NCBI RefSeq assembly: GCF_046119375.1
Contig: NW_027362769.1
Coordinates: 259,656,001 to 259,720,000 of the forward strand
Source: Phyllobates terribilis
Lineage: Eukaryota
DNA length: 64,000 nt
Direction: 5' to 3'
Shown here: piece by piece, positions 12,276-50,887 of the stretch
How positions within the stretch are numbered: position 1 is the first letter of the stretch
Layout: the number at the start of each line of letters is the position of its first letter
The notes under the pieces: generated by a model
The model's database searches: none
What the model saw: only the letters and a program-made list of their open reading frames with translations
Told to the model about the DNA's origin: nothing
Position numbers and translations under genes: made by a program

Positions 12276-12390
12276 CCCAGCCAATAGTTTTGGCCTAATA
12301 CCACAGTTTGGCCACTCAGCTCTGCTCGGTTCCCATCCATTGTTTTTTTGTGCAAACAACTCCAGAGTTGTGAATTAGTTAACCACCAAA

Positions 12391-15300: not shown

Positions 15301-16092
15301 GGGGAGAGGACAGAGGAAGGAAGCATGATTGTTACCTCGCCACAAACACAACAGGGACTTGGTGCTCCTGGATGCGCAACACACATGAGTGCTTTCTTGC
15401 TGCACTACCTGCAACATGACCCTCGAATTGTGAGAATTAGAAATAATCCTGACTACTGGGTTGCCACACTGTTAGATCCCCGGTACAAAAGTAAATTTGC
15501 CGAAATTATTCCTGCCATAGAAAGGGATGCACGCATGCAGGAGTATCAGCAGAGACTGTTGCAGAATCTTACATGTGCCTTTCCACAAAACACCAGTGGT
15601 GCACGTAGTGAATCTCACAGTTCCAACTTGCCAACCGTGGGACCGTCAAGTGTTCAGCACTCAAACCGTAACAGAACCACAGTATCTGCTGGTAACATCA
15701 ATTTTGCGGAATCATTTCACCACTTTTTTAGCCCATCCTTTGCAAGGCCACAGGAGACAAGAAGTCTGACAAATAGTCAACGCCTAGAGACGATGGTACA
15801 GGAGTATCTCCAAGTAAACATTGAAGCCATGACTGTGTCACTGGACCCTTGCTCTTTTTGGGCTTCCAATCTGGATAAATGGCCGGAGCTAGCCACTTAC
15901 GCCTTGGAGATCTTGTCATGCCCCGCAGCCAGCGTTCTGTCTGAACGTGTGTTCAGCGCTGCTGGTGGTGTGCTGACAGATAAGCGCACGCGGCTCTCCA
16001 CTGATAATGTAGACAGACTCACGTTCATAAAGATGAACAAATCATGGATCCGAAATGACTTTTCTACCCCTGTGTCATCCTGGGGAGAGTAA
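12391..16092 (+). pseudogene. hAT (ZBED-like) transposase, 1233 codons with one in-frame stop at 15214-15216
   Basis: BED finger (WAFF...CNIC...H...H), TTDTWT, CDNAAN, CMAH, DVPTRWNS and SERVFS plus the hATC dimerisation tail. The two ORFs in the track are in the same frame. Confidence 0.93.
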
Positions 16093-16529
16093 AAGCTTGA
16101 TGATTGGTTAAAATCACCCTACCAACCGTTTTAAGCTTTCAAATTACTAATCATGTTTATCTGTATCTTGGCTGGAAAATAATTTGGGCTTTGTAGCAGT
16201 GTGCAGCACTGATTCTATTAGGCCATCTATAATAAGCTCCACCAGATTTAAAATTACTAATCATGTTTATCTGTATCTTGGCTGGAAAATAATTTGGGCT
16301 TTGTAGCAGTGTGCAGCACTGATCCTATTAGGCCATCTATACTAAGCTCCACCAGATTTAAAATTAATAATAATTTTTAGCTGCATCTAGCCCGGAAAAT
16401 AATTTTGGGGCTCCGAGATGCGCAAGACACATAAGTGCCTTCTTTCTGCACTACCTGCAACATGACCCTCATATTGTCAGAATTCGAAGTAATCATGACT
16501 ACTGGGTTGCCACACTCTTAGATCCCCCA

Positions 16530-17901
16530 AACTTTTCGATCAACCTTTTCATTTTAATAAAGACCAAAAAAATGGTCATTTTTGAAATTATAAGCAATAG
16601 CCGGTTATTAGAAACTGAAATCAAACAGTTTTCAACTCAAAACTTTATTCTAGGTGATGTTACATTTTCACATAGGACCCCTTGTTCGAAAGGAGCTTCT
16701 GAACTCTCTCGTCCATTGAATTTGTCAGGTTTTGGATGGTTTCTGCTTCAATTGTTTTGCATGAGGACAGAATACCCTCCCAGAAGTGTTGCTTAGATGT
16801 GAACTGCCTCCCGCCATCATAAACACTCCTTTTGATGATGCTCCAGAGGTTCTGAATGGGGTAGAGGTCAGGGGAGCATGGGGGTCACACCATAAGTTTG
16901 TCGCCTTTTATGCCCATATCAGCCAGAGATGCAGATGTTTTATGTGCAGCATGAGATGGTGCATTATCATGCAAAAAAATGATCTTGCTGTGAAATACAC
17001 GGTTCTTCTTCTTGAACCATGGCAGGAAGTGCTGTTTGAGAAAATCCACATACATTATGGAGTTCATCTTTAGCGCCTTCAGGGATCCTAAAGGGGCCGA
17101 CAATCTCTCTCCCCATGATTCCAGCCCAAAACATTACTCCACCTCCTCCTTGTTGGCGCTGTAGCCGTGTTTGCGTGGGGTGTCCATCAACCAGCCATCC
17201 TCCACTCCATCCATCTGGACCATCGAGCGCTGCACGGCACTCATCCGTGAACAAAACAGTTTTGAAATCAGTCTTCATGTAATGTTTAGCCCACTGGAGC
17301 CATTTCTGCTTGTGTGAAGTGGATAGAGGAGATCGACAGGATGGCGTATGCACAGCTGCAAACCTCTGAAGGACCCTGCATCTTGTTGTTCGGGGGACGT
17401 TGGAGGCACCAGCAGCTTCAAAAACTTGTCTGCTGCTATGACAAGGCTTTTTTGCCGCTGCTCTTTTAACCTGACGTAATTGCCTGTAGGAAAGAGTCCT
17501 CAATTTGCCCTTATCAGCACGCACACGTGTGTACTGTGAATCAGCTACATACTTCTTGATTGCCAAGACACTTCATCCTGATCATCGCACAATGTTGATT
17601 GTAGTCATGCCTTGACCTAAACCCTCCACAATTTGTTGCTTCTCAGCAGCCGACACATCCTTTTTCTTTCCCATTTTGGCAGAAAATGTAGGCTGCTTAA
17701 TAATGTGAGACAGCCTTCTTAAGTAGTCTTGCCTTTCATTGGACACACCTGCCAAACTAATTAGCACAGGTGTCTGCAATTGCTTACAGTGATATAAAGA
17801 GCCCTGACACACATCACCATCAATGAGTTTAACTGACAAACAAACAAATTCTTCCCTTATCACTCCTAAACACTTTTTGCATAATAATTTGGAACACAGT
17901 G
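16530..17901 (-). mobile_element. Tc1 transposon, decayed and truncated at the 3' end
   Basis: TA-CACTGTGTTCCAAATTATTATGC TIR at 17901. Translation gives MGKKKDVSAAEK, LFTDEC, LHDNAPSH and SPDLYPIQNLW (catalytic E changed to Q), with stops and frameshifts. Confidence 0.9.
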
Positions 17902-17970
17902 TACATGTGCTTTTCCACAAAACACCAGTGGTTCACGTAATGAATCTTACAGTTCTAACTTGCCAACCGT

Positions 17971-19800
17971 GGTCTGTATGGAGTTGTTCAATAAAGGGCC
18001 CAAAATTAAGATAACATAGATGGGAGAGGTCTCTATGAATAGGAATTCCTAAGTATTTGATACCCTGTGAGGGCCAGGCAAAGGGAAAGTTGGACTGGAT
18101 GGAATCCTATATGGATTTGGGGAGGGAGACATCGAGGGCCTCACACTTCTCTGCATTGAATTTAAAATTTGACCATGTAACAAAGTGATCTATTTCAGCC
18201 ATAACAGCATGGATGGATATATGCGATTGAGTGATATATACTAGGACATCATCAGCAAATAGAGAGCACTTGTACTCGGTGCCTCCCACCTCAATCCACC
18301 TAATATTGGGGTTATGGCGAATTGATGAGAGCAGGTGCTCCGTCACTAGGATGTATAAGAGAGGGGACAGAGGACATCCCTGCCTTGTCCCATTGGTGAT
18401 TGTGAAAGGTGATGAAAATGTTCTGATGTACCCCCTGGGCCTTGGGACACCCGGAGCCGGACCCTTTTTGGTGGATGCTGGTGGTTGTAGTCTTTGTGGC
18501 GGTGACCCGGTTCCATGGCTCAGGGTGGTCAAACCAGTGGCGGAACTATTTATGTGGTTTTGATGTTTAAATGTCCGACTACGCCACCCGTGGATTGCGG
18601 TCAGAGTGAACCGCCGCTGCAGGGCAGACCGCTGAGGCTGGTGTTGTGGGTGCAGCAGAGCGTAGCATAACTCCCCACGGGAGGAGTATAGCCTCAGGGC
18701 AGTGTATGCGGAGGATGGGGGTGATGGTGCAGGGCAGCAGCAGTAACGACACGGAGTCAGTGATGCAGTTCAGGGCCTTTACTCACAGTTCTTATTATCC
18801 AGACCACGTCTGCAGGTAACGGCTGCCCACGTCGTACTGTGCTCACCAGGTGAGGGGCTCAGACAACTCCCAGATAACTTTGGAGCACTTCACAGGACCC
18901 CCTTTGTGTGTCCTTTGTCTGGCCTTTCTTACCAACCCTTCTGTCCGGCTGCCTCGGGCCTCCTCTTGGTAAACTTGACGCCAGTTTCCCTGACCCTATG
19001 TGGTGCCTTCCTAGCGGGTGTAGCGAGGGGCTGCGCCACATAAAATGTCAGAGCCTCCGGTTTCTAGCTGAGGGTCGTTTCCTGCCTCCACTAGTTTCGG
19101 GGACCGGTCTCCCCCTTTGGCCTGACCCCTCCACGCAGGTGGATTCGGGCGTGCGGTGGCGACTCGCCCATCCGCACCCCTGGGATCCCTTCATTCCTCG
19201 TTCCTGGAGCCTTCTCCGCTCCTCTTCCTTCCTTCTCCCTCTTCCAGGCCTGGGCCTCTGTTACTAGGCCCGCCTCCGGAGCAGAGCTCATGCAGAGCCC
19301 CTGCTCCCTGCCACTTCTGCTCAGACTTCTCTGCAGTGAACTAAGATGGTGCCCACCTTTTATACTCCCTTCTCAATGCACCCAGGAACTGCTTCCTCCC
19401 TGCTCCTGCACTACAGGGTTCCCCTTCCTCAGTGTTCCCTCCCCCCACTCCAGCCAGGGACAGGGACTGTCGTGCCCATCTCAGAGGCATATTGGTCGCC
19501 CTGCCCCACGGCAATGTGGTGTAATGCATGCAGGTGTCGGGTCCTGATCCACACTCCATCCTTACCTGAGAGTGAGATATCACACCTCTGGGTGAGGTGC
19601 AATACCTCTGTAGCAACCGAGCCCTCAGGGTGCTACAGTTCCATTTATCTTCAGCCTAGGTGACGTATTGTGATACAGGGCCGTGATTTTGGCTATAAAA
19701 GGGTCCCCTAGACCCCTACCTCAAGCTTTTTAAGAGAATCATATATGGCGTGCCAGGAGACTCTATGGAATGCTTTCTCAGCATCCAACGAGAGTATCTA
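17971..19800 (-). mobile_element. L1/Tx1-clade LINE RT fragment split by a solo LTR
   Basis: SLDAEKAF...LYHN...INGTFSSPFTITNGTRQGCPLSPLL...LFADD...KYLGI reads across the LTR insertion. Confidence 0.85.
18424..19637 (-). mobile_element. Gypsy solo LTR
   Basis: TGTAGCACCC...GGGGGTACATCA flanked by TSD GTTC (18420-18423 and 19638-19641). Confidence 0.88.
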
Positions 19801-20050
19801 ATTACAAATTTTTAACTGCATCTAGCCCAGGAAATACTTTGTGCCTAGTAGCAGTGTCTGCTAGTCAGCGGATTATCCCGGCTGTTAAGCAAGCTACACC
19901 ACCTGTAGTTTGGACACTTAATTTTTTCAAAGGAAATGCTTCGGGACCACGGGATACTCAGTGAAGAGCATCAGGAGGCACCCCAAGGCATAGGGGCTGG
20001 GACTGGCAGTAGGATGCCTTGCGGTGGACAGCCGAGCTCGATCCTTATAA

Positions 20051-20172
20051 AAGCTTTTTAACTGCAGCAGCTTTAGTGGACGCTACTGGAGCTGGAATTA
20101 CGCGGCTGCTGGCATGAGACTTGCCCTCCAATAGATCCTTGTAAATGGATTTAAAGTGTATTCATTCAAATT
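20051..20172 (-). pseudogene. 18S rRNA fragment (helix 18 / 530-loop region) inside the hAT
   Basis: Reverse complement reads ...ATTGGAGGGCAAGTCTCATGCCAGCAGCCGCG-TAATTCCAGCTCCAGTAGCG...GCTGCAGTTAAAAAGC, roughly 85-90% identical by eye to vertebrate 18S. Confidence 0.9.
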
Positions 20173-21337
20173 AGAGAGACAATTTAAATGAAAAAGCTTA
20201 GAGCTGCCAACACCACAGGGGGGCACGCTCGACCCACCAGCGGACAGGCACCAGTATTGGGAGAGGGGGGCTGGCCGTCAGGGTTCACCGCGGCTCTGGC
20301 ACAAACCCGGCGACACGGAGGTGGCACGGGCAGGAGCGGACTGAACGTGTCGGCTTCTCACTTTTTGAATTTTAGAAGGGCATGACATGCCTATATTTGT
20401 GTCTACCCCTCCTTTTACTCCTCCACCTCTTTTCTTTTCGCATGACTATATGTACTTGTCACTTTTCCATGTGTTAGTTGTGTCTTCTGAGCAGTTTGTC
20501 AGCTTTTGGACACCTTTGAAGGTGTTTTCTATGTGTTTCTATGTGTTTTTGTTTGCCTGCCATTGGTTTTAATGGTGTTCGAAGGTGTTCGACGAACAGT
20601 TCGACGAACAGTTCGGCGAACACATGGGTGTTCGACGAACCAAACCGAACTCGAACACTACGGGGGTGGCTCAACACTAGTCAGAAGCTCCAGGGAGAGA
20701 GGCAGGAAGATATAGAAAGGAGGCTTTACACCCGGTCACTGGGGAGCAGGTCCTGAAGTGCACACCACCTACAAGTATCCCGGACCATACCTGACTACCA
20801 TCATCAGTAAAGGTACGGAAGTGAACCCCTGTGTGCGTGTCTGTTCTTCCTCTGACCCGGCTGGGTCCCCTCTCTCCTGTTTCCCTTCACACCATCCCTC
20901 CCCCGGGGGCCCCCTCCACCTGTGGGGAGCAGAAACACCTCAGCTGCCATCCCAACGTCCCCGGAGGTCTGAAGCAGCGCTGGTAATCATTACCAGGTGC
21001 CACAGGTGGCGTCACAAACTATTTACTTTATTTTTATTTTCTATCCAAGTTCCAATCCCCTTTTTCAAGAGGGACCCCAGGGTACGGGCCTGGGAGCGGA
21101 CCACCGCAACATCCCCAAACCAGGTAAAGGGACGGGTACCGAGTCATCCCCATCCCCTGGGCGCGTCAGCAGCGTCACTAGACGGGGGGCAGCCTCGGCT
21201 CCATACTGTATGGCTATGAGTATGTATAAATCATGCATACCCTTCGGTCCTGGGTCAGAAACCGGCAAATCCCTGCGCTGGGGGATTCATGAGTCTGCAG
21301 TCACATAGAGTAACTGCAGACTTATCAGTTTGAACAA

Positions 21338-22578
21338 CCCCTTAAGGACTCTGGGATTTTCCTTTTTTGCATTTTCGTTTTTTGCTCCCCTTGTTCGCAG
21401 AGTCATAGCGTTTTTATTTTTTGGTCAATATATCCGGGTGAGGGCTTATTTTTTGAGGGACGAGTTGTACTTTTGAACGACATTACTGGTTTTACCATAT
21501 CGTGTACAAGAAAACGGGAAAAAAATTACAAGTCCGGTGAAATTGCAAAAAAAGTGCAATACCAAAGATGTTTTTTTACCACGTTCACTGAATGCTAAAA
21601 CTGACCTGCCATTCTTATTCTCCAGGTCATTACGAGTTCGTAGATACCAAACATGTATAGGTTCTTTTTTATTTAAGTGGTGAAAAAAAATCCAAAATTT
21701 GCTAAAAAAAAAAATGGTGCCATTTTCCAAGACCCGTAGCGTCTCCATTTTTCGGGATCTGGGGAGATTATTTTTTGCCCACCGAGCTGAAGTTTTTATT
21801 GATTCTATTTTGGGGTAGATCCGATGTTTTGATCGCCCGTTATTGCATTTTATTGCAATGTTGCGGCGACCAAAAAAAGTAATTCTGGCGCTTAGAATTT
21901 TTTTCTCGTTACGCCGTTTACCATTCGGATTAATTCTTTTTTTATATTGATAGATCGGGCAATTCTGAATGCGGCAATTCCAAATATGTGTATGTCGGGT
22001 TTATTTTTTATTATTTTATTTTGAATGGAGCTAAAGGGGGGTGATTAAAACTTTTATATTTTTTTTATTTTTTTTATATTTTTAAAAACTTTTTTTTTAC
22101 ACTTTTTGCTTGCTTCTATAGTCTCCATAGGAGACTAGAAGCAGCAACTATCCGATAGCCTCTGCTACATAGAGGTGATGAGCAGGTCACCTCTATGTAG
22201 CAGAAATGCTCCTGTGATATGAGCACCGACCACTAGGTGGCGCTCATCGCGATCAGTACATGACAAGCACTAAGGTCTGCTGCAGACCCAGGGTTGTCAT
22301 GCCCACTCATCAGTGACCCACGATCATGTGACAGGGTCACGATGGGTGGGGTAAGTGACGCGCTTCTGGCACAGCGCTGTTAAATGCCGCTGTCAGAGAT
22401 TGACAGCCGCATTTAACTGGTTAACAGCTGCTAGTGGATCACGATTCCACCCGCGGCTGTTGCTGGTACATGTCAGCTGTAATAATGAGCAGACATGTGC
22501 CCGGTTCAGTGCGGGCTCAGCGCCAGAGCCCTCACTGAACTGGGGGTGATAGCTATTATGCCCCAGGCTTTATAGGGG
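21338..22578. mobile_element. Non-autonomous TTAA-type (piggyBac-like) DNA element
   Basis: Starts CCCCTTAAGGAC and ends AGGGG-TTAA, with no ORF. The superfamily is assigned from the termini only. Confidence 0.5.
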
Positions 22579-22765
22579 TTAAGACACGGAGAGGGATATA
22601 CGTATATTGTGGCACTTACACAGTTATTTCTCCTCTACTGAAGCCCTTTAGTGTTCTCGCCCACTATGATATCCTTCCATGGTCTCCATAGAGTATGATG
22701 CCACAAAATAGGCCCAATACAAAATGATGTTCCCACATTCCCCCACCTACACAACATGTTGGCAC

Positions 22766-22944
22766 TAGTGATGAGCGAGTATGTTTTGTTAACCCTTTCA
22801 CCGAGTATGCTCGGGCGAGCACCGAGTAGTTACAGCTGCTCGGTGATATGTTTGAATCACTCCCGTGTGCATGATTTGCGACTGTTTGACAGCTTTAATA
22901 CATGTGAGGAATGTGTAAGAAATAGACATACTCGCTCATCACTA
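22766..22944. mobile_element. hAT MITE
   Basis: Perfect TIR TAGTGATGAGCGAGTATG/CATACTCGCTCATCACTA with a decayed 8-bp TSD GTTGGCAC/GACGGCAC. Confidence 0.75.
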
Positions 22945-22980
22945 GACGGCACCACAAACCCCACACAATAAGATGGTCAT

Positions 22981-25900
22981 TAATGATGAGCGAGTGTGCT
23001 CGCAACTGCTCGGTACTCGCCCAAGCATCTCACTGTTCGAGATGCACTGACTGTAATGCCGTAGCCATGTTGGTTGTGGCATTACAATGATTGGCTGGCC
23101 GCATAGAGTCATCACGTCTATATCAGACCCAGTGACCCTGTGCTTGTCACAGTCTACCCTTCAGACAGGCAGAGTATGGAGAGCTGCTGCTGAGATAGGG
23201 AGAGAATTGACGGTTTATTAATGAGGTATTAGGTATTCCACAGTAAGATATATATCCATCTGAACTAAGAGTCCTTCTAAGAACTAATACAGCTGCATAT
23301 ATTATTAATCCTGGTGATAGCAGGAGTTAGGCAGGCAAAGTTTGTGGAGATTGTATGAGCAGAATAGGATTCATTGTACATTCTGTCTGCTCTGCTGCTG
23401 TTACAGATATTCATAGCCCTAGATATCAGGGCTAATTTTTTTTTTGCTCTTAATCCTGATTATTTGCTTAAAAAGTCATACAGTACATTATTTTACTGCT
23501 CCATTTGCTTGTTAGCAGAATACAGCCAGATTGTTTTGATTTTATTCACATTTCTGTATTGTGGAAGCAGTCCATCATCAGCCGTGATCCCATATTACTG
23601 TGGTAATAATCGTGACATTTTTTGGAGCGTGCCAAATATTACACTCCAGTTAAAGTCTGCCAGTTGTGTGCTGTTCAACCTATTCACACTTAGTTGCTGA
23701 CCAATACCACTGCCTAAAACCATGGTTATCAGACGGGATCAGATATTACTGTGCTAATAATCCAGAATGTTTTGTAAGTATGCCAGATATTATACTCCAT
23801 TTAAAGTCTGCCACTTGTGTATTGTTCAAAAATATTCACACTTGGTCGCTGTCCATTGCCAATGCCATACTACAAGGCTACAGCCTGAAACCGTGGTCAT
23901 CAGACAAGACCAGATATTACTATGCTAATAATCCAGAATTTTTTCAGAGCGTGCCAAATATTACACTCCATTTAAAGTCTGCCAGTTGTGTGTTGTTCAA
24001 CCTATTCACACTTGGTTGCTGACCAATACCATATCTATAAGGCCACTGCCTAAAACTGTGGTCCCAATATCACTGTGGTAATAATCGCCACATCTTTTGG
24101 AGCGTGCCAAAAATTACACTCCAGTTAAATTGGGCAAGGCGCGTGACAAGGGACGGGGAAGTGAACATGATGCTGATGGGGCACACAGAGGCCATGGGCA
24201 AGATGAAACTGAGGAAGCACAACAAACACCCACATCATGTCGAACTACTTTCCTGACCCAATTTCTAGGGGGCCACGGAAAACCACTTTTAAAGCCACAG
24301 CAGTGTGAAAAGGTTGTTGGTTGGATAGCAGATAATGCTTCCAGTCAGTTTGCCACCACCACCCTGTTTTCCACACTGTCCAGCCTAAGTAGTCTTGAGT
24401 CTGGACCACATATTCCTCCCCTTCATCCTCCTTATTCCCACCATGCTGAGTGCCCAGAGACAAGTGATCCCACACTTGGACACTCCGAAGAGCTGTTCAC
24501 TTTTCCATTTATAGATTCAGGCCTCTCGCCTGGCCTGCTTCAAGCAGAGCAAGAGGAGAGTGCATGTAGCGATGCCCACATATTTGAGCAGCCACGATCA
24601 CACGAAGGCGATAGTGGGAAACTGCAATTACTGTTGCAAGAGGTGGATGATGATGATGATGATGATGAGCACAATTACCAGCAAGTCAGGAGGAGGCCTA
24701 GTGTGTGTACTTGGAAGACGAGGTGGTGGACAATGGAGTCAGTGACCCAACCTGGCAAGGTGACATGCATAGCGAGGACAGCAGCACAGAGGGGGAGGGA
24801 GGTGTAGCACCACAACAGGCAGGGACAAGCAGTGTGGTGGCCACAAACACAAGGCGGGCAATTGCTCCCCGGAACACCAACATGAGGGAAGTTGCCAGTC
24901 CAACTGTTAGGTCTTCCAGAATCTGTCTCTTTTTTAAAGACTTTCCAGATAACCCCAAAATGGCCATTTGCAACATCTGCTATGCCAGCATCAGCAGGGC
25001 AGCAAAACTACCAGCCTGACCACCACCAGCATGCTCAGGCACATGACAGCAAAGCATTCGACTAGTTGAGCCGAATGCCAGGGTCCAAAAACAGAGTCTG
25101 CGGGTGATACCACTGCTTGTTCTGCTGTTGTGCATGCACACCAATACCCTGTCCATGGTGCAGGTGAAGATGCATCCCGCCCTGCACCTGTCATTGCACA
25201 TTCACAACCACCACCATCAGCAACTACGTCCGTGTCCCAGCGTAATGTTCAGCTGTCCCTACCCCAGTCCCTTGAATGCAAGTACCCGCCATACATAAGC
25301 ACGTGTCCCAGAACATTACCCCTGCCCTCAACAACATAGTTACTGGGAAGGTCCACCTAACCAGGGAAATGTGACAAGTGCTTGTGGCCAGGGATGGTAC
25401 ACAGGCCCGGCGTGAGCACCCGGCGCACCCGGCCAAGTGCCAGGGCTCTGGGCCCACTCACCATCGGGTACCCCGGTGCACTATGGGCTATGGGTGAGCG
25501 GTGCAGTGCTGGTGCCAGCGCCCACCACCACTTCTCGCTTGCTCAGGGTCCCGGCAGCCGGCGGCACAATAGTTACCCCTCCTTGTTCCTCCGCAGCAGC
25601 TCCCGTCTCTTCCGTGGCTGCTGCACTGTGATGTCTCAGCTCAGAGGACGTGGTGGCGTCTTTGCACCATGCTCTCTCCTGAGCAGTCACAGGGCAGAGC
25701 AGGAATACGCCGGTGACGCTGAGGAGTCCGGAGCAGCGGCAGTAGGTGAGAAGTGAGGTATTTGTTTTTTTTTTCCTTTTATATGTATGAAGGCATGGGG
25801 CATTATATGGGGGGGGGAGAGGTGACATCCTGCATGGGGCATTATATTGGGGGGAGACATCCTGCATGGGTCATTATATGGGGGGGTGACATCCTGCATG

Positions 25901-27559: not shown

Positions 27560-30500
27560 CTAGCTTTTACCCGCGGCTTCGCTCGCGTGGAAGTTTCGTG
27601 ACAGATCATTTTAATGGTAAAAAAAAATAATCGTAATAGTAAAAAAAAATAATCTTAATAGTAAAAAAAAATAATCTTATTTAGTTACTCGTACATCCAA
27701 AATTTCAGATGTCTAACTTCAAAACTGACGGATTCCATACAATCTTTGAACCCCTATAATATTAAGAGGGAAACTCTTGAGGGTGGAATTATCAAAATTC
27801 CTTTCTTAGTGCTCATTTAAGCTATAATAGAACTTATCTGCAAATTTCAAGATGCTAAGTTCAGTGGTTTCGGCTGTGCGTTGACCGCTAGGTGTGTCAG
27901 TTAATCAGGTTTACAGTTTTATATATTCTTCGCCTGTATGGTGTGTTTATAAAAAGTAGCCCTATGTCCTTCCCCAGGCTTGAAATTATCCATATCAAAT
28001 TTCATCACAAACGGATTACTAAACACTGATTAATAAACAGGACGGACTGAAGTTACTTGCGTTTAATATTGTTCGTGTTAGTAAAGAATTAGTATGTAAT
28101 TGAAATAATGGACATCCGCAGGTAATTTATCTATGTGTTTTTACTGCAATATACTCCTGTAAACTATGTTATTTGATTTCTTTCGTTCAGCGAAAATATG
28201 TAGATTTTGCGATTTAGAAACACGTGAGCAAGCTACGTATAGCTGACCGTGGGAAAAACAGGGCGTGCCTAAATGTATCCCCGCTACCTTCAAAGTTTGC
28301 CCTTGCGATTTATTGATGGTCATTGAAAATGCAACTTTAAGTGGGAACTGCAAACGTTTGAAATTAAAGGGTAAGTTATTGGGTAATATTGGTATAAGAA
28401 TATTTTCACCCTTAGCTTCTCCAGTTAAAATTGTGGCCTTTACAATGTGCCTGCCTAGTTCAGTGACTCGCAGTCTAGTGCCATTACATAATCTTGGGGC
28501 GTCCAAGTTGCGCATTAACAAAACGGGTATACCGACCTTTAATTCGAGCTTATGAGATGGGACCCCGGATAGCTCCAAAGAGTTAAGAAACTCCACGGGG
28601 TAGCTCGTACAGTCTTCAGATGACATGACTGTGTCGATAGAGTTGTAGGTTGTTGCATCGCTGGTTACTTGGTCCAAGATAATTTTATTGATTTTCGCAA
28701 CTGTTTCATTTCTTGGTGCTAGTATAGTTCTTTCACATAGCCAATTTTCTTCGTGGATGTTTTGTTGCAAATTTGGAAAAACTTGAGTAATAAGTGCGTC
28801 TTCCGAATCCACAACATGACAAAATTGGTTAGTGAATAGAACCATACCTTCTTCGTCAGTTTCGATTCGACCTTCACCGATCTCGAGCAGTTTCTCAACG
28901 TACGCGCCCGACTCTAGATCACAGAATAACTGGACACGCATGTTGGTGGTGAGGTGCAGCTTTTCAACTTTGGTCCATAAATATGAGTATTTCAGAGATG
29001 CATTAATTTCGTCTGCTGCAGTGCCTCGCTCGATGACAGGCAAAGTTTGCCTAAAGTCCCCAGCCAATAAAACAACCACACCACCCATTATTGTTTGTTT
29101 ACTGTGTAAGTCTTGTAGACAACGATCAAGAGCTTCGATGGCGCATTTGTGTGACATTGTGCACTCGTCCCACACGATTAGTTTGCACTGTTGCAACAGG
29201 AGGCCACGGGCGCTGCTCTTGCTGATATTACACAATGGGGTTTCTTCGTTTACCAGATTAAGAGGTAATTTAAAGACTGAATGTGCCGTCCGTCCACCGC
29301 TTAGCAATCTTGCAGCAATTCCAGAGGAAGCCACAGCTAATGCAACGTTATGACCGCTACGAATTTTTGCTAAAAGTAAATTAAGCAAGAAAGTTTTTCC
29401 TGTACCACCCGGGGCATCAAGGAAAAAAAGTCCGCCTTCACCATTCTCAACTCGTCCTACTATTTTGTGATAAATCTCTCTTTGATCAGGTAGCAAACGT
29501 GGCTCAGTTTCGCAAACGTGAGCGTCTAACTGGGTGGTATCATAGCTTAGCTCTTTTATCAACTCGTTCGACAGCTCTCCTCTACGCCGCTGTGAGGGTA
29601 GACCAAAATCGGACAATTTCTTTCCAGAAATTATTAATATTTTGTCCTCGATAAGCCCCAACGCCTCATTGAAACAGAGATCATCGTTAACGTGATCCAT
29701 TCTTTCAAATCTGTGCATGATATCCTCTGATAACGCAGTTTTATACTTGTGCCAGAGTTGTAGAGGATTGGATAAACCGCAAGTGCATATCAATATGGCA
29801 AACAGCTCTCTTATTTGCGCCGGGGAGCGACATAGCACGGCCTCTTCTAAGGTGGTATCCCAGTGGTTATCATCTTCCAACAACCCCATCTTCTCACACA
29901 CCTGCCGAAAAGTTGCAAGTTCTTGACCTTCAAATGTTTTTAAATCCGAGAAGTTGGTTGGACCCCTTATTACATTCAGCAGCATACGCAAGCAATAACA
30001 TTCAAAATTGATAACGTGCACCGTGTAAATGCGACCTAGAGCGTCTCCTGCCTTCACACCTGGCCAGCCATCGACAGGTGTTCCTTGTAAATGACGTTTC
30101 CATTGCTTCCGTGCCACATTCCAAGTATAGTAGCGAGGCACGTCAATGTAAAGTAATGTTTTTGCAAACGTATCACTTTGGCACAACAGGAAAAATGCAG
30201 TTAGTGTAGTTTTAGGTGGTGCTTCTAATCTCTCTCTAAAATTATTTTCCGTAAAGTAAACCCTCTCGCCATTGGGTAAATGAATCGCGAGATGAGTGAC
30301 GGTTGGGTGTCTCTCGTGCAGAGGCAGACCTAAGATCCGCCACGCTGCTTCGTTACTACTAACATATCGGCCAGTTCTAAAGGTCTGCACCTCATCTCTT
30401 GGATCAATGTTAACATTCCCTTGCTGGCGGATGTTAAAAATAGCCTGGTCGCTACCCTTATTAATATATTTTCAAATATATTTTATCGCCTGTACCGTAT

Positions 30501-33500
30501 TACAGAACTCTACATTTAAATGAGAATTAAAATTTTTTGATAAGAGTGGAGAATATGGGACCACCCAGCTATTGTCCACCAATATTTCCTGTGTTCCTCT
30601 ACGGGTTTTTATAATCGTCGTGCGTCCACCATTCTCTGGTGCTCTGCGCCTGTACAAAGGATAACCTTTGTCATTGGTTTGAGTATCTTTTAAAAGCTTC
30701 CTCGGATATTTTTTGGTACATTTTCCTCCTTCATGCATGGCGATGAAGAATTGAATGTACCACATGGCCCGTGAATCATATTCTTTGTCACTGTATCATA
30801 GAGCTTTTGATCGGTTTCTGGGTTTGGTATCTCAGCACATATGATTTCGTCAATTTGGTTCCGATGCAATTTTTCCTTTAACCACAGCAGTAAGTGCACA
30901 TGAGGCAAACCTCGCTTTTGCCACTCGATCGAGTACATGAAGCATTGCATATCACCAAATATGTTACCTTTTGTAAGTAGAGCTACCAACTTCTGTACTT
31001 TTATTCTAAATACTCGGGCTGTTAAGTCATGTCTGTCCGTTGAATTTTGACCAGCCATAAGCTCTTTGGTGATTTCTGGCCAAGCGGGGTTGCAAGTCAT
31101 TGTAATAAATAAATCAGGCCTCCCATAATTACGTACGTATGTGAACGCATCTTGTCTGTATTCGTGTAGGTATCTGGGGCTATTTACAAATGATGACGGG
31201 AGAATCACCATCTGACCTAAGTTATTTGGATCCAAATCCGCATCATTTCTTATTGCATCTTGCAAGTGAATATAATTTTCTGCGCGCAGTTTTTTTTTAT
31301 TTAAAGAAATGAACCTTAAGCGCTCACTTTCCATCTTTACATACATGTCGACCAGAAACTGATGAAGTAGGAGCCTACACTTAAGCATCAAATTAAAATC
31401 GCAGCGACGGAGCATCAAGTGAAAGGCATAAAAATCTTTGCAGGACACCTTTTTGCTTGGCATTGCTTGTTTGGTAATTGAATTTATCTGAGGAATATCA
31501 ATGCTGTACCCCTCTTGTCCTTTCCAAAAAATTATTGGGTACTCGAGAGCGTCATAGAATCTATGTGTATCGGGAACCCTAGTGAGCATGCCATCGCACG
31601 GCTGCACAACGATGTCCCGAGACATAGTTTGTTTGCTACTAACTATTACAGCAGCTATTTCATTTGTAGTAGAGGCATTGAATCGTCTCTCATGTTGACC
31701 ACGTGGTACACGGTCTGGGTGAATCACTACTTTGAAATGATCGTCATTGATCATTCTGTCTCTAGCCAATTTAAATTCATGCACCAAAATGTTGTGGTCG
31801 TGAAGTACTCGTTGTAATTTTTTAACTATGTTTCTATCTACGCTTTGCAAGCACTCAGTACGCCTGTTAATTTGTTCTTCTTCGTCACCTATGAAATAAA
31901 CTTGTAAAAATTGTGGTTGCGAAATGGACGTAGGAATTAAAGAACCGATACGGTGGTATACTTGTCCTTGAATTGTAAAGGTCGGGCAAAACCCTGGCAT
32001 TGAGACAATTTGATCTGCTCCAAAAGACGTCATATGAAAGCACATGTTGTATTTTCTTATATTATTTAGAAAAAGGCGAGATTCATCAGTTTCATTAGAG
32101 AAAAGCTCTTTTAAAGGTTGAACTGGCTCGTCTATATAAGGAAGAGCTACTTTCCCGCTCAAACAACACATACCTGCTGCTTCCTCTTTCCACTTAAGAG
32201 CTCCGCAATATTTGCAATCTATGGTCATTGCTTCTATTTTTATAAGCTTGTGAGTTTCATAACCAAGAGTCTCATCATACTCAAATGCAGCTTTATTAAA
32301 CAATATCCATGTATTTCTTGTAAATGTTTGACGTCGCTGTGCAGCCCTTTCAGCAACAGTGCGTCTGCGAGATTCGGCCATTTCATAAGTTTCAGTGGCT
32401 CTTTGGGACGCCATGTAAGTCGCTTGCTGCTGACGTCGAGCTTGGGACTGTTCTTGAGTTTCAGCAGCCCGTTGAGACGCCAGATACTCCGCATGCTGTT
32501 CACGTCGGGCTTGGGACTGTTCTTGAGTTTCAGCAGCCCGTTGAGATGCCAAAAACTCCGCATTCCGTTCACGTCAGGCTTGGGATTGTTCTGGAGTCTC
32601 TGCAGCTCTATGTGCCGCACAACGCACCGCCTGCTCAAGCCTTCGTTGCTTGGCTTGTTGAGACGTCTCATCACGTCTAATTATTTTCATAGCTCGGGCT
32701 TTATTAGAGCTTTGCGAAATGTTAGACTTACGCTTTCGTGGCATTTTTATAAGTACTAATTACAAAATAGGTACTTAGTAAAGTTCAAACAAAATACTAA
32801 AACAATCTAATTAGTTATATTACGATCGCTGTACAGACGATATCAGTTGTATATGACTGGTCTATGAGGAGCAGGTGTGGCGCGGTTACCCATAGCAACC
32901 ATTCCCAGTGCTCTGTGGGAGCGGAGAGCAGCCTGCTGGTGCTGTGGGTGACATGCTGCGCTGCACACACACAGGGCTGTGTTGCACACAGGAGGGGAGG
33001 ACGCCATTTGTGTAGCGCTGCTGCCGGTGCTGTCAGGCTGCAGTGTGTGCATCCTCCATGGAGAAGCGCTCAGGTTACTGTCCCTCCCCGTGTGTGAGTC
33101 ACTTCCCCTCCACCCAGGTGAGGCGCTCGGAACTTTCCCGGCTGCAGCAGCTGGCGCAGGTGAGCGCATGTTTTATTATACGGTGTTATGTGGAGGGACA
33201 ATGGCAGCGGGGACCCCCTGTGTGAGTACAATGACGGCCCGGTGCCCCTGGGCAACCTGCAGGAGGAAGCCTCACACTCCCCCCGGGCTGTGGGCGCGGG
33301 CAGGCCGTGCTGGGACGTGTAGTTCCCTAGTAACCTGTTCCTGACATATGAGCTGTTTTCTGGGCTATTTTTTTTTATTTTTTTTTTTTAAGTCTGAGAA
33401 AATGTCATAAATTATCCTTCTCCCTTCAGATGTTTCCAGAGTGTAATGTATCAGGGTGAGCTCATGACTGACAGCTGCCAAAGTTTCTAGGAAATGTCAG

Positions 33501-34158
33501 CCCCTGGGGGTCGTGTGTGAACCCCCTGTGCCACACTTGTACCTGGCCACGGTATATGATCACCCCTGTATTCCGACTGTGGACAGGCGGCAACTGTGAC
33601 CTCACTATACAATGATCCACTATGGGCAAATGATTGTATTATCAATCTCTTCTGACTGCTGTAAATCAGCCATTTAAATATCACCTGTGTATTTGTGTAT
33701 ATAAGAGTTTGATAAATATACTAAAAAGTTTGATAAATATACTAAAATGTGCATTGTAAAATTGTAAAATAGTATCTAATTTAATTAAATTTATGGTTCA
33801 CAATTTAGGTCATAGTGGCTTCCACATAAAAAGTAGATATATGCTGTCGCGGACTTTTATTTAGAACTATTCAAGACAAACAATTCTACGGTACATCATC
33901 TTTGTGTAACTCCAACGGTTTAGGCAGCGTATGCCAAGATAGCTCTCAGAGGCAAGATTTTTTTCCGACTTAATTGACATGTATCGTTATATTACGACCA
34001 AAATTACATAAAATCATTACAAATTGTAGGCTATATGTTATTCCGATGTATAATCTATATTACTGTAAAGTTTCATGCAAATCCGTCCAGTAGTTTTTTC
34101 GTGAAAAAGTAACAAACATACATACTCACAAACTTTCGCATTTATAATATTAGTAGGA
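27560..34158 (-). mobile_element. Autonomous-type Helitron, 6.6 kb, complete ends
   Basis: 5' end A|TCCTACTAATATTATAAATGCGAAAG at 34158. 3' hairpin CCACGCG...CGCGGG followed by CTAG|T at 27560. Inserted in an AT dinucleotide. Confidence 0.95.
28141..32744 (-). pseudogene. Helitron Rep-PIF1 helicase, about 1530 codons, intronless, with 2 stops (32574-32576, 30472-30474) and 1 frameshift (about 30725)
   Basis: Rep motifs PDLFITMTCNP, EWQKRGLPHVH and YPLYRRR. Helicase motifs GGTGKT, WDEC, GDFRQ, NGTRL, TINKSQG and GQLYVACSR. Confidence 0.95.
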
Positions 34159-37100
34159 TTTGACATTTCATCACCACTACACATTTATTTATATTTTCCT
34201 TTTAAGATATACATTTTACACCAATATTGTTATTAGTGTCAAACAGCCATGTTGCTCAAACAAAAGACATTCCAAAAATAATCATAATTTAGACATAATA
34301 GCAGGAATCCATATCTATCATCACACTAAAAGGGGATCCAGAATCTTTTTTATTTTTATTTTTTTTAATTTTACTCTCATTCAATTCATGATTTCAATTA
34401 CAACGACTATTACTACAAAACCAGCCAGGCTAAATTATTAATCAACCCTGATACTACAGAAAGGATGAAAACTTAAAACCCTCATTAAAGCCGTTCGGGC
34501 AGCGAGATTTCAGCCTGTATATCCAGCGACACTCTTCTTGCAGGAGTGCTTTATCCAAATTCCCTTTTCTTGGTCCCAGGGTGATAAGCCTAATCCCCCA
34601 TACAATGAAATTTAGGGGTTCATGCCTATGAGTGTTCCTCATGTGCACCGACAAAGGAGTATCTACTTCCGTATTTTTTGAGCTAATATGATTTGAAATT
34701 CTTCTCCGCAACTCCTGTATTGTTTTACCAATGTACAATTTCGGGCATGGGCACCTTATAGCATATACTACCCCTCTAGTTCTACAGTTAATATCATCCA
34801 TGATGAAAAACTTCTTGTTATCAACTGAATTAATAAACTCCATCATTTTCCGAAGTAACTTACAGAAGGAACAGGGACCACATGTTTGTGACCCTCTTGT
34901 TCTTCTGTCTGAGCTAGACCGGCTATTAGGTGGGGTAAAAATGCTCAGATATTCACGTAATTTTTCCCCCTTCGATATGTTACTCTGGGGTTAACTCCAA
35001 TGACATCCCTCAAATCAGGGTAGGCTCTCAAAATTGACCAATATTTACGTAGAGTATTATACATACCATGTGCTCATTCATCATATGTCCCTATAAATCT
35101 AATTAAGGGATCACATGGTTTATCACCCGATTTGTCCAATAGCGCATCTCTCTCAGACAATTTTGCCCTGTTGAAGGCCTTATGCAAAATTTTCTTTGAA
35201 TAGCCCCTTGCAGTAAACCTTTGAAATAGATTTCTACTTTTTACTACCAAATAAGGCATCATTTGAACAATTACGCCTTGCCCGCAGATACTGTCCGACC
35301 AGTATTCCAGCCATTAAGGATGGAGGGTGCCAGGTTTCCCAATGCAATAAATTGTTCGTGGAAGTCGGCTTCCTATAAATATCAGTATGGATGTTTCCCT
35401 CTCCATCAAAAGATATGGTTAGGTCCAAAAAGTTTGGCTTGTAACCAATTTCCTTTGTAAAATGCATACCAATTTTGTTATTGTTAAGGATAGATACAAA
35501 ATCAGAAAATAACCGTGCTTCACCATCCCATAAAATGAAAACGTCATTGATGTATCTACCCCAAAATAAAATGTGACTCGTCTAAAGGGATAAATCCTCA
35601 CATAAAACGTGCACATCTTCCCACTGCCCCAAAAATAAGTTAGATAAAGTGGGTACACATGAAGTATCCATCGCGGTACCCCTTATCTGATGATAGAAGG
35701 TACCGCTAAAGGTAAAATAATTGTACGTAAGGACAAAGCTTAATAGAGAATAAAGAAAATCAGTATGTGCCTTAAACTGCCTTCTCTTGGCCGAAGAAGA
35801 TGTTTGACAGCTGCAATGCCTAAACCATGATCAATGTTGCTATAGAATGCCTCTGTATCCAAGCTCGTGAGGATTGTAGTCTCAGAGACATTTAAGCCCC
35901 TCAGTTTCAAGACCATGTCCTTAGCATCTCGGATGAATGATGGTGAAGTATTTACAAATGGGGCCAATAACTCATCTAGGTACTGACTGGCACCCTCTGT
36001 CAAGGAATTATTCCGGGAAACAATAGGCCTCCCATGTATCGGAAAGATCTTTCTATGGACCTTGGGCAAGGCTTAAAAGGTTGCGATGGTGGGCTGGGGA
36101 TTAAAAATATACTTAAACTCATCTTCAGACAGTAGATTGTTTCTTCTAGCTTCCCTTAACAGGGTAGATAGTTCCTTCAAATAGAGCTCGGTGGGATCCG
36201 ACCTCAGAATGGTATATGTTTTTCTATCTCCCAATAGATCTTTCACCATTCTAGTGCAATCTAACACATCCATAAGGACAATGTTGCCCCCCTTATCGGA
36301 GGGCTTTATAGCTAACTCTTTAGTTCCTTTCTCTCTACTACTCACAGAAACCTTGCTGATCTCCTCCTCTACCATAGTGACAAAAGTGTTAATGTTGTGG
36401 TATTGGGAGAAATTTGTGGTGTTTTTACTCTTTTGTTTGAGTGAGGAGAAGGGTGGGGATATATCAGGTGGATCAACCTCCAACTCTTCCAGGACTTGTA
36501 TTGCCTCCATCTCTCGCCTATTAGTCTCCATCCCATCTCTGTTCTTAATAGCATGATATTTATGAAGTCTTAACTTCCAGGCGAACAGATTCAAATCTTT
36601 AGTCCAACTGAAGGGATCAAAACCCGGAGTTGGAGTGAAAGATAAACCCCTTTTGATAAGCAATACATGTGTCTCATTCAGTGTTTGGGAAGATAAATTA
36701 AAGATCTGTAGGTCCGTCCCCATCTTATAATCACCACCATCTACGACGGGTTCAGGTTCCCTAAAAAAGACGGTTGCCGAGTCAAACTGATACTTGGCAT
36801 TGGGGTATTTACTAAGCCACTGCCCACGAGTGATGATGTCGATGTTGGTATATGTATACTTGGGGATAATATTGGCGCTGTCAATTGGCCCATATTCATT
36901 GTGCCCACTGCTTGAGAGGCAGTCATATTGTCAAAAAGGGAAGGTATAGTCTGCTGTGTGGGTTCCGTTCTCACACCCACAGTAGCGGGTAATAAGGAGG
37001 ATAAATGCCCATCTACATGAATCTGTGTATTTCTTTTGGGACGTATATTGTCTCCCTGCATATTTGTCCATGATTTAAAGGGGAAATTTTTCTTTTGTCT

Positions 37101-49723: not shown

Positions 49724-50887
49724 ATGTCCGAGGAACAGCACGACGCCAGAATACCGGTTAATGGCTCTGATGTTCAACCCGCGCCTGACGCCAGGCTGGC
49801 CGGAGCGGCCGCTCCACCAGCAGCGCCTGTAACCCCTGTCATTCCCATAACTCTGCCGTACATTCCTGGAGCAAAGTGGCTCCCCCAGTACAACGGCAGA
49901 CCAGATACCCTGTCTGGATTCAAACGGAAGATATGCGGTATCTTGGACATGTATTCTATGACAGGCAAGCAGAGGGCCGCTGTTGTATTAGGACAACTGA
50001 CTGGTGCTGCGGAACAGGAAGTGGAAACATGGTCAGCCGCAGACCAGGAGTCAGTGTCAAAGCTACAGACTGTTTTTGAGGATCATACCGAGGCGGACCT
50101 CCGGATGAGGTTCTACAACTGTTCCCAACAGCCAGAGGACAATGTTCGGGACTATGCCTGGCGTCTACAAGGGGCCCTGCGGGCTCTGAAACAGGTTAGT
50201 CCGACCAGCATCGAAAATGAAAACAAAATGCTGAAGGAAGAGTTTGTCCGGGGACTGAGGTCTCCAGAGGAGAGCAGAACTGTACGTTGGTGGTCCTTGG
50301 ATCATCCAGATGCCACCTTTGACAATCTTAAGGACATGGCTATAAAAGGACTGCAGCCCCTGGAAACAAATGCCATCCAATGTTACCAGGGTGGGGCTAC
50401 CCCAGTGCCTGCTACACCCACCTTTTCCCCAGTGGCTGCTGAAGCCAAGGTTCCAGCAACGTCTCCTAGAGAGCTGGACAGTCTGCGCTCTGATGTGCGC
50501 CAGTTGAGCAAAAGCCTGACCACTGTGCTGAGTGCTCTGCAGCTACGGACGGAGCCCGAGGAAGGAGGGAAAATCCTGTTAGCAGATAGCCCTGAGGATG
50601 TCCCCTGGATGCGAAGGAGGAGGAGGACAACACCACCCTCTACGAGGATCAGTGACCAGCGCCGTCCACAGAAGGACCCTACCTGCTACTGCTGCCACAA
50701 GACCGGACACACCGCCCAGAATTGTCCTTTAAACGAGAAAACCCTGGGGCCGAGGGCCGACACCCAGGAGTATCTCAGCCAGGCCCCTCAGACTGGTACA
50801 ACAGGTTCGTCGGAGGAAGATCTTTCCTGTCCATTGTGCTGGACGGCATCCCGACGCACGCTCTGCTGGACACAGGATCTCAGGTAA
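49724..50887 (+). CDS. gag: Gypsy C gag
   Basis: 387-aa ORF with CYCCHKTGHTAQNC knuckle, homologous to Gypsy A gag. Confidence 0.9.
   Translation: MSEEQHDARIPVNGSDVQPAPDARLAGAAAPPAAPVTPVIPITLPYIPGAKWLPQYNGRPDTLSGFKRKICGILDMYSMTGKQRAAVVLGQLTGAAEQEVETWSAADQESVSKLQTVFEDHTEADLRMRFYNCSQQPEDNVRDYAWRLQGALRALKQVSPTSIENENKMLKEEFVRGLRSPEESRTVRWWSLDHPDATFDNLKDMAIKGLQPLETNAIQCYQGGATPVPATPTFSPVAAEAKVPATSPRELDSLRSDVRQLSKSLTTVLSALQLRTEPEEGGKILLADSPEDVPWMRRRRRTTPPSTRISDQRRPQKDPTCYCCHKTGHTAQNCPLNEKTLGPRADTQEYLSQAPQTGTTGSSEEDLSCPLCWTASRRTLCWTQDLR
50728..50768 (+). promoter_or_regulatory. -1 programmed frameshift signal
   Basis: T TTA AAC in gag phase, an 8-nt spacer, then a CCTGGG/CCCAGG stem. pol is in the -1 frame. 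Confidence 0.75.

What the first reader, a model, noticed from the sequence alone, without database searches (positions are those of the whole stretch)
32845..33690. Helitron carries a host-like promoter and exon segment with an RFX X-box upstream of RepHel
Seen: an abrupt GC/CpG-rich block inside the AT-rich Helitron 5' region. It contains GTTACC-CAT-AGCAAC (32885-32899, fits the X-box GTNRCC-N0-3-RGYAAC), a YY1-like CGCCATTT (about 33002) and AP-1 TGAGTCA (about 33095). It also has two CAG|GTGAG donors (about 33118 and 33160) and an acceptor TCCTTCTCCCTTCAG followed by a small exon and GTGAG (about 33430-33460). Known: Helitrons capture gene fragments, and X-boxes mark ciliary and spermatogenic promoters. 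Inference: a captured vertebrate promoter about 100 bp from the RepHel ATG could give this element germline expression and spread RFX sites.
Basis: partly seen in the sequence, partly recalled or inferred. Interest (0 to 1): 0.7.

Follow-up and report, generated by a model that had tools for sequence, protein, structure and literature searches.

The report
Helitron carrying captured frog gene start
An insect-type rolling-circle transposon in a poison-frog-like genome carries about 880 bases that look like the promoter, first exon and part of the first intron of a frog gene. This repeats a kind of capture already known from bat and Xenopus Helitrons, and the proposed RFX control is not shown.

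Summary
Every motif is at the stated coordinates, inside a GC-rich block (about 32820-33700; core 62% GC). The block lies in the leader of a complete minus-strand Helitron (27560-34158), 76-116 bp upstream of the RepHel ATG (32744).

The main reading, a captured host gene 5' fragment, is well supported:
- **Composition.** The block is CpG-depleted like the host flanks (observed/expected 0.49 against 0.44-0.51). The Helitron body is not (0.92).
- **Absence from relatives.** Danaus, Eumeta and Trichonephila relatives lack it, and so does a 94-99% identical Helitron in coded organism D.
- **Spread with the family.** It has no transposon termini of its own. In organism A it is as deep as the rest of the Helitron, and in organism C one contig spans it.
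- **Splicing.** A 2.9-kb contig from a probable RNA run leaves the block exactly at the predicted CAG|GT donor (33159/33160).

- The fragment lies head-to-head with RepHel, so it could drive RepHel only as a bidirectional promoter.
- The X-box is a single consensus match (1 in 64 kb, 0.79 expected).
- The "small exon" has no RNA support.
- This RepHel copy is dead.
- The parental locus was not found.

The closest precedent is HelibatN3/NUBPL in bats. The scan has not noted this block on other DNA.

The parts
27560..34158 (-). Complete Helitron (element strand is minus), inserted between A and T
   Evidence: The 5' end reads TCCTACTAATATT... at 34158. The 3' hairpin plus CTAG lies at 27560-27591. 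Both termini and the whole coding region align to Danaus, Eumeta and Trichonephila Helitrons.
28144..32744 (-). RepHel gene (Helitron_like_N plus PIF1 helicase), inactivated in this copy
   Evidence: Pfam: Helitron_like_N 1.4e-55, PIF1 4.8e-63. The ATG at 32744 aligns with the Eumeta start. There are TGA stops at 32576 and 30474 and a frameshift near 30726.
32421..32606 (-). 69-bp tandem repeat (2.7 copies) inside the N-terminal coding region of RepHel
   Evidence: TRF. The same periodic hits appear in the Danaus and Eumeta copies.
32820..33700 (+). [quoted passage not shown]
   Evidence: GC 53% and CpG o/e 0.49, like the host flanks, against 0.92 for the Helitron body. Organism D's contigs leave the window at 32819 and have zero depth over 32888-33583. 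Organism C has one contig spanning 32743-33812. Arthropod relatives have no homology between about 32756 and 33740. The edges are uncertain by about 40 bp.
32885..32899 (+). RFX X-box consensus match GTTACC-CAT-AGCAAC
   Evidence: It is the only match in the window, where 0.79 are expected. P about 0.018 within the block. Binding was not tested.
33002..33009 (+). YY1-like CGCCATTT
   Evidence: Present. It fails the stricter GCCATNTT form.
33092..33159 (+). Transcribed first exon (minimum extent), ending at the donor that is used
   Evidence: A 2877-nt X5 contig (depth 65) matches 33092-33159 at 64 of 68 positions. It then continues with unrelated sequence (AGAACATGTTATAGCC...) exactly at CAG|GTGAG. 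The contig reads through the first donor at 33117/33118.
33160..33700 (+). Partial first intron of the captured fragment, with a T-run at 33366-33389
   Evidence: X5 has no depth over 33236-33583, whereas DNA runs of organisms A and C cover it fully. T-run from TRF.
33308..33323 (-). Perfect THAP11 / M4 core-promoter motif ACTACAcgTCCCAGCA, oriented towards RepHel
   Evidence: One hit, against about 0.001 expected per window. The motif definitions ACTACANNTCCCA and ACTAYRNNNCCCR come from PMC3627581 and PMC5006282.
33431..33455 (+).
   Evidence: The splice-like signals are present. X5 has no depth there, and the spliced contig joins exon 1 to a different sequence.
33706..33747 (.). 21-bp tandem duplication at the right edge of the block, variable between copies
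   Evidence: TRF. Organism C leaves out 23 letters at 33714, and three runs leave out 8 letters at 33753.
33740..34158 (-). Conserved Helitron 5' terminal region
   Evidence: Aligns to Eumeta (75%, down to 33740), Danaus (81%, down to 33992) and Trichonephila.

Best explanation
The block at about 32820-33700 is a piece of a frog gene's 5' end: promoter-proximal DNA, a short first exon ending at 33159, and about 0.5 kb of first intron. It was copied into the variable leader of an arthropod-type Helitron, in the opposite orientation to RepHel. Since then it has been carried along as the family multiplied to a very high copy number in at least two related organisms.

**Shown:**
- The block is foreign to the Helitron lineage and host-like in composition.
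- It travels with the element, including a RepHel-deleted derivative.
- Its second donor is the point where a long contig from a probable RNA run switches to other sequence.

**Inferred:**
- The fragment still acts as an outward-facing promoter plus splice donor, about 1 kb inside the Helitron 5' end. Insertions in the right orientation could then trap downstream host exons, as HelibatN3 does.
- Because the promoter abuts the RepHel ATG head-to-head, it may also start RepHel transcripts as a bidirectional promoter. RNA-like contigs run without a break from RepHel across the ATG into the block and stop before 33236.
For: **Anatomy.** The Helitron termini, the A|T target and the RepHel domains are all present.

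**Composition.** CpG o/e is 0.49 in the block, 0.44-0.51 in the host flanks and 0.92 in the Helitron body. TG and CA are in excess (1.5-1.6) in the block core.

**Absence from relatives.** The leaders of Danaus, Eumeta and Trichonephila align only at 34158-33740 and from 32756 leftwards. Organism D holds the Helitron at 94-99% identity but has zero depth over 32888-33583, and five of its contigs leave the window at 32819.

**Co-amplification.**
- Summed depth in organism A is 13,000-22,000 over the block, 10,000-25,000 over the rest of the element, and 25-185 in the flank.
- In organism C, a 7.8-Mb run yields a 1034-nt contig that spans both junctions. Its flank beyond 34159 differs from the window's.
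- Another contig in that run joins 28028 to 32743.

**Splicing.** The X5 contig leaves the window at 33159|33160. A minus-strand reading of that junction would not be canonical.

**RNA status of X5.** X5 holds 0.45 of the sampled words. This fits contigs that differ by 1.2-1.6% and lack the intron quarter of the stretch.

**Promoter signature.** A perfect M4/THAP11 motif is present, expected about 0.001 times per window.

**No transposon hallmarks.** There are no terminal inverted repeats, no Rfam match and no second copy in the window.
Against: - No parental locus was seen. The only trace is 68 nt shared with one spliced contig, which could instead be a chimeric transcript started by a Helitron copy.
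- X5 is labelled RNA only as a guess. Contigs carry no strand, and the tool warns that holes in depth prove nothing.
- Summed contig depth is not a copy number.
- The open frame from ATG 33058 stops six codons into the joined sequence, so the exon gives no protein handle.
- The captured fragment lies antisense to the element, the rarer orientation according to the literature quoted in PMC12001565.
- This copy's RepHel is broken, so nothing here shows an effect on transposition.
Confidence: 0.65

Rival explanations
1. The block is host DNA picked up by the Helitron, but it is not a working gene start. It would be filler from a GC-rich non-genic or decayed region. The spliced contig would then reflect a cryptic donor used in a read-through or chimeric transcript from one insertion.
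For: The parental gene was not found, and proteins and metagenome or viral contigs gave nothing. The short ORF stops just after the junction. CpG o/e is only 0.5. The X-box is at chance level for the window.
Against: The junction falls exactly on one of two strong donors. The spliced contig is a single long one at depth 65, higher than the Helitron contigs in the same run. A perfect M4/THAP11 core-promoter motif is present. The layout of promoter, exon and partial intron matches the known 5'-biased captures.
Confidence: 0.15
2. The capture happened in another CpG-methylating host before this Helitron lineage reached the frog. The fragment would then not be from this frog's own gene.
For: This Helitron type appears to move between distant hosts: its closest proteins are from Lepidoptera and spiders, and organism D holds it at 94-99% identity. 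Composition alone shows only that the source genome was CpG-depleted.
Confidence: 0.1
3. The block is an unrelated host transposon or retroposed sequence that landed in a master Helitron copy and was then amplified with it.
For: A 7-bp direct repeat TGTATAT lies at 32849-32855 and 33696-33702. The T-run at 33366-33389 could be a minus-strand poly(A) tail.
Against: There are no terminal inverted repeats or LTRs. No second copy occurs in a transposon-rich 64-kb window. The block's depth does not exceed the Helitron's in the DNA run. Organism D's contigs diverge at 32819, which is 30 bp before the supposed duplication. The poly(A)-like run is internal rather than at an edge.
Confidence: 0.05
4. 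This is the reader's specific mechanism: the X-box recruits RFX2 or RFX3, so the captured promoter gives RepHel germline expression and the family seeds RFX sites across the genome.
For: The X-box fits the consensus exactly. It lies 40-200 bp upstream of the likely + strand start and about 140 bp from the RepHel ATG.
Against: One match in 64 kb against 0.79 expected. There are no binding, tissue or conservation data. The promoter faces away from RepHel. A far less probable motif (M4/THAP11) is a better candidate regulator.
Confidence: 0.12

Closest known systems
HelibatN3 with the captured NUBPL fragment (Myotis bats; PMC4224331, PMC4778049)
   Same: [quoted passage not shown] The donor can splice to downstream host exons.
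   Different: HelibatN3 is non-autonomous and its parental gene is known. Here the fragment sits in the leader of a RepHel-bearing element, head-to-head with the transposase gene and 76-116 bp from its ATG. The host is a frog, the Helitron is of arthropod type, and the parental gene is unidentified.
Heli1Xen1 gene captures in Xenopus laevis (PMC12001565)
   Same: A horizontally transferred Helitron family in frogs that captures mostly the 5' ends of host genes and appears to be expressed.
   Different: It is a different family, with no dendrobatid hosts listed. Its captures were reported in non-autonomous copies, were defined by coding sequence, and have few copies each (19 fragments in 64 insertions).
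Lepidopteran and spider Helitrons (Danaus, Eumeta and Trichonephila loci L001, L002, L004)
   Same: Same termini, the same RepHel (74-85% amino-acid and about 81% nucleotide identity), and the same 69-bp repeat in the N-terminal coding region.
   Different: Their leaders hold unrelated AT-rich sequence where the frog element holds the GC-rich block.

Membership tests
Helitron (RepHel-encoding rolling-circle transposon) | 5' TC terminus, 3' hairpin followed by CTRR, insertion between A and T without target duplication | tested here: met
   TCCTACTAAT... at 34158. GC-rich hairpin plus CTAG at 27560-27591. Flanks are A and T on the element strand.
Helitron (RepHel-encoding rolling-circle transposon) | Rep (HUH) domain fused to a PIF1-type helicase | tested here: met
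   Helitron_like_N 1.4e-55 and PIF1 4.8e-63. The gene is broken by two stops and one frameshift.
Helitron-captured host gene fragment (transduplication, HelibatN3/NUBPL type) | Foreign segment lying between the Helitron termini and missing from related elements | tested here: met
   Absent from the Danaus, Eumeta and Trichonephila leaders and from organism D's copies.
Helitron-captured host gene fragment (transduplication, HelibatN3/NUBPL type) | Mobilised with the element: several copies with different flanks | tested here: met
   Depth equals that of the rest of the Helitron in organism A. Organism C has a junction-spanning contig with a different flank, and a RepHel-deleted derivative.
Helitron-captured host gene fragment (transduplication, HelibatN3/NUBPL type) | A collinear parental locus outside Helitrons in the host genome | not testable with these tools
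   No eukaryotic genome search is available. The only hint is 68 nt shared with a spliced 2877-nt contig. Protein, metagenome and viral scans were blank.
Helitron-captured host gene fragment (transduplication, HelibatN3/NUBPL type) | Gene features (exon, splice donor) that are actually used | tested here: inconclusive
   The contig leaves exactly at CAG|GT 33159/33160. However, the run's RNA status is a guess and the strand is not given.
RFX-regulated (X-box) promoter | X-box GTNRCC-N0-3-RGYAAC near the transcription start | tested here: met
   32885-32899.
RFX-regulated (X-box) promoter | Occurrence beyond chance, or conservation of the site | tested here: inconclusive
   1 observed against 0.79 expected in the window; P 0.018 within the block, judged after the fact. 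Conservation among copies could not be read out.
RFX-regulated (X-box) promoter | RFX binding, and ciliary or spermatogenic expression | not testable with these tools
   No ChIP or tissue-resolved RNA data were available.
Vertebrate CpG-island promoter | At least 200 bp with GC of 50% or more and CpG o/e of 0.6 or more | tested here: inconclusive
   The best 200-bp window (33120-33319) has o/e 0.67 and GC 65%. The core overall has o/e 0.50 with a strong TG/CA excess, as expected of a decayed island.
Independent nested transposon | Own termini (TIR, LTR or poly(A) at an edge) with a target-site duplication, and free-standing copies | tested here: not met
   No inverted repeats at the edges, no other copy in the window, and no excess depth. 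There is only a 7-bp direct repeat, which does not fit organism D's break point.

The most novel reading that the evidence does not exclude
After an arthropod Helitron crossed into poison-frog ancestors, it acquired a host bidirectional (M4/THAP11- and X-box-bearing) promoter directly upstream of RepHel. That capture replaced or boosted its insect promoter and allowed the burst to thousands of copies. The same module now faces outward from every copy as a promoter plus splice donor that can start chimeric host transcripts.
Probability: 0.2. Interest if true: 0.75.

Novelty: new member of a known kind. Interest (0 to 1): 0.5.

Why it matters
Helitrons are known to spread host promoters and first exons, most clearly in bats. 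This looks like a second vertebrate example at high copy number. It has two differences: the carrier is a horizontally acquired, insect-type element, and the captured promoter sits against the transposase gene itself. If that promoter does drive RepHel, it would show how a transferred transposon adapts its expression to a distant new host. If the outward promoter and donor are active, the many copies would be a large source of new 5' exons and promoters in these frogs. As it stands, this is a well-documented capture with untested regulatory consequences.

Tried and rejected
- **Self-comparison of the block against the window:** no second copy.
- **Inverted or direct terminal repeats:** none at the edges.
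- **Rfam at E up to 1:** nothing.
- **Pfam on the block's ORFs:** nothing.
- **Word search with the 108-aa ATG ORF of the block:** no relatives.
- **Exact look-up of the block and RepHel ORFs:** not in the collection.
- **Exact 26-mers of the X-box region and of the exon:** no match in metagenome contigs (both) or viral contigs (X-box only).
- **The 30 letters that follow the splice junction:** not in the window.
- **Organism D's alternative leader sequence:** not in the four arthropod loci.
- **Earlier notes searched by sequence:** blank.
- **Sp1, CCAAT, NRF1, ETS, E2F, E-box and CTCF consensus strings:** none in the block.
- **Reading the junction as a minus-strand intron end:** rejected, because the dinucleotide would be AC, not AG.
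- **Treating 33393-33700 as a host SINE with a poly(A) tail:** rejected, because depth there is not raised above its neighbours.
Full report
**1. What is at the site**

Region 32845-33690 lies inside a complete Helitron on the minus strand, 27560-34158.
- The element's 5' end reads TCCTACTAATATT... at 34158.
- Its 3' end is a GC-rich hairpin followed by CTAG at 27560-27591.
- The flanking bases are A and T on the element strand.
- The two large minus-strand ORFs carry Helitron_like_N (1.4e-55) and PIF1 helicase (4.8e-63) domains.

The RepHel start codon is at 32744 and aligns with the start of the Eumeta homologue. This copy is dead: it has TGA stops at 32576 and 30474 and a frameshift near 30726.

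The nearest proteins are from Danaus (81%), Eumeta (74-85%) and spiders. The host flanks look like a poison-frog-type genome: a hAT ORF has its only strong hit in Ranitomeya, and earlier notes of the scan name the same kind of host.

**2. The observation**

The compositional step is real:

| Segment | GC | CpG observed/expected |
|---|---|---|
| Block (about 32820-33700) | 53% (core 62%) | 0.49 |
| Helitron 5' end | 29% | 1.21 |
| Helitron body | 41% | 0.92 |
| Host flanks | 47-49% | 0.44-0.51 |

The more telling measure is CpG observed/expected. The block carries the signature of a CpG-methylating host genome. The Helitron around it does not.

The X-box consensus occurs once in the window, where 0.79 matches are expected by chance. 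On its own it is weak evidence. The two CAGGTGAG donors lie within 42 bp of each other, against eight CAGGTRAG on both strands of the whole window. That is more than chance.

**3. Is the block part of the Helitron lineage?**

It is not.
- The Helitrons of Danaus (L001), Eumeta (L002) and Trichonephila (L004) align to the window from the 5' terminus down to 33992-33740, and again from about 32756 through the whole coding region. Nothing in them resembles the block.
- In the laid runs, coded organism D holds this Helitron at 94-99% identity on both sides. It has zero depth over 32888-33583, and five of its contigs leave the window at 32819.
- The block is therefore an addition to the variable leader. 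Its left edge is near 32820 and its right edge is between 33700 and 33740.

**4. Does it travel with the element?**

It does.
- In a DNA run of organism A, summed contig depth is 13,000-22,000 over the block, 10,000-25,000 over the rest of the Helitron, and 25-185 in the flank beyond 34280.
- In organism C, a run of only 7.8 million letters yields a 1034-nt contig covering 32743-33812, which is the whole block with both junctions. Its flank beyond 34159 differs from the window's.
- Another contig in that run joins 28028 directly to 32743 (the 27 loose letters match 28002-28028). This is a derivative of about 1.9 kb that has lost RepHel but keeps the leader and the block.
- Such coverage from so little sequence means a very high copy number, although summed contig depth is not a count.
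- The block has no terminal inverted repeats, no second copy in the window, no Rfam match and no depth above the Helitron's. An independent transposon is therefore unlikely.

**5. Is it a gene start?**

The strongest evidence is a 2877-nt contig at depth 65 in run X5 (organism A, flagged as probable RNA).
- It matches 33092-33159 at 64 of 68 positions.
- It then continues with unrelated sequence exactly at CAG|GTGAG.
- Read on the minus strand, that junction would not be canonical.
- The first donor (33117/33118) is read through.
- The predicted small exon at 33431-33455 has no coverage and is not the sequence joined to exon 1.

Two points support X5 being RNA.
- X5 has no depth over 33236-33583, while DNA runs of organisms A and C cover that stretch fully.
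- Its share of sampled words (0.45) fits contigs that differ by 1.2-1.6% and lack the intron quarter of the stretch.

Still, the RNA label is a guess by the tool, contigs carry no strand, and the tool warns that holes in depth prove nothing.

The ORF from ATG 33058 ends six codons after the junction. The exon is therefore probably untranslated and gives no protein handle on the parental gene.

**6. Orientation and mechanism**

The captured exon reads away from RepHel. The promoter-proximal DNA (about 32860-33090) therefore lies between the RepHel ATG (reading leftwards) and exon 1 (reading rightwards). Two consequences follow.
- **Outward promoter and donor.** These sit about 1 kb inside the Helitron 5' end. 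That is the arrangement which makes HelibatN3 an exon trap (PMC4778049).
- **Driving RepHel needs bidirectional activity.** X5 contigs form an unbroken chain from RepHel (30800-32485, 1.6% different from the window) across the ATG to 33121-33159, then stop. This fits minus-strand transcripts that start inside the block. It fits + strand read-through equally well.

A perfect THAP11/M4 core-promoter motif (ACTACAcgTCCCAGCA) lies at 33308-33323 on the minus strand, just upstream of that boundary in the RepHel direction.
- About 0.001 such matches are expected per window.
- The motif definitions are from PMC3627581 and PMC5006282.
- I picked it out after scanning about 20 consensus strings. Even so, it is a much stronger promoter signature than the X-box.

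**7. What was not achieved**

The parental locus was not found.
- No tool here searches eukaryotic genomes by DNA.
- The block's ORFs have no relatives.
- Exact 26-mers are absent from metagenome and viral contigs.
- The sequence after the junction is not in the window.
- RFX binding, tissue of expression and conservation of the motifs among copies could not be tested.

**8. Comparison with what is known**

[quoted passage not shown] Promoter and donor activity have been shown experimentally (PMC4778049).
- **Xenopus.** A 5'-biased capture by a horizontally transferred Helitron is described for Xenopus laevis (PMC12001565). That family is different and is not reported from dendrobatids.
- **This case.** It is a new member of that kind. 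Three features distinguish it: the carrier is an arthropod-type element in a frog, the capture sits in RepHel-bearing copies against the transposase ATG, and it is antisense to the element.

**9. Verdict**

Capture of a host gene start is likely (0.65). RFX-driven germline expression is unsupported (about 0.1).
- The scan has not recorded this block on other DNA.

Noticed in passing
window 33308-33323 (minus strand): A perfect THAP11-binding / M4 core-promoter motif, ACTACAcgTCCCAGCA, points towards RepHel. About 0.001 are expected per 64 kb.
   Followed up: partly
window 28002-28028 joined to 32743 (seen in run X16, organism C): A contig joins the Helitron 3' region directly to the base next to the RepHel ATG. 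This is a non-autonomous derivative of about 1.9 kb that has lost the whole transposase gene but keeps the leader with the captured block.
   Followed up: partly
window 30892-32819 and about 33700-34158 (run X18, organism D): Another coded organism holds this Helitron at 94-99% nucleotide identity but without the block. Its 5' terminal region has very high depth (about 2800). It may be the donor lineage or a sister lineage in the horizontal transfer.
   Followed up: no
window 32421-32606: A 69-bp tandem repeat (2.7 units) lies inside the N-terminal coding region of RepHel. Danaus and Eumeta copies have it too, with shifted register. Depth peaks here in two runs.
   Followed up: no
window 32576, 30474, about 30726: This RepHel copy has two TGA stops and one frameshift. 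The first stop aligns with an arginine in Eumeta, as expected from CpG decay after arrival in a methylating genome.
   Followed up: partly
window 32849-32855 and 33696-33702: A 7-bp direct repeat TGTATAT brackets the GC-rich part of the block. It does not match organism D's break point at 32819. It may be microhomology from the capture event, or chance.
   Followed up: partly
window 34454-34846 (minus strand): An ORF with a GIY-YIG nuclease domain (2.2e-06) lies just beyond the Helitron 5' end, as in Penelope-like elements. The Helitron appears to have landed in or beside one. This flank is itself repeated (depth 25-185 in a run of about 2 Gb).
   Followed up: no
window 12391-16092 (+), 878-3034 (-), 49724-54851 (+), 57990-59036 (+): Other transposon genes fill the window: a hAT transposase (BED finger plus hAT dimerisation domain), gag/protease/integrase ORFs of LTR elements, and a Tc1-type transposase.
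   Followed up: no
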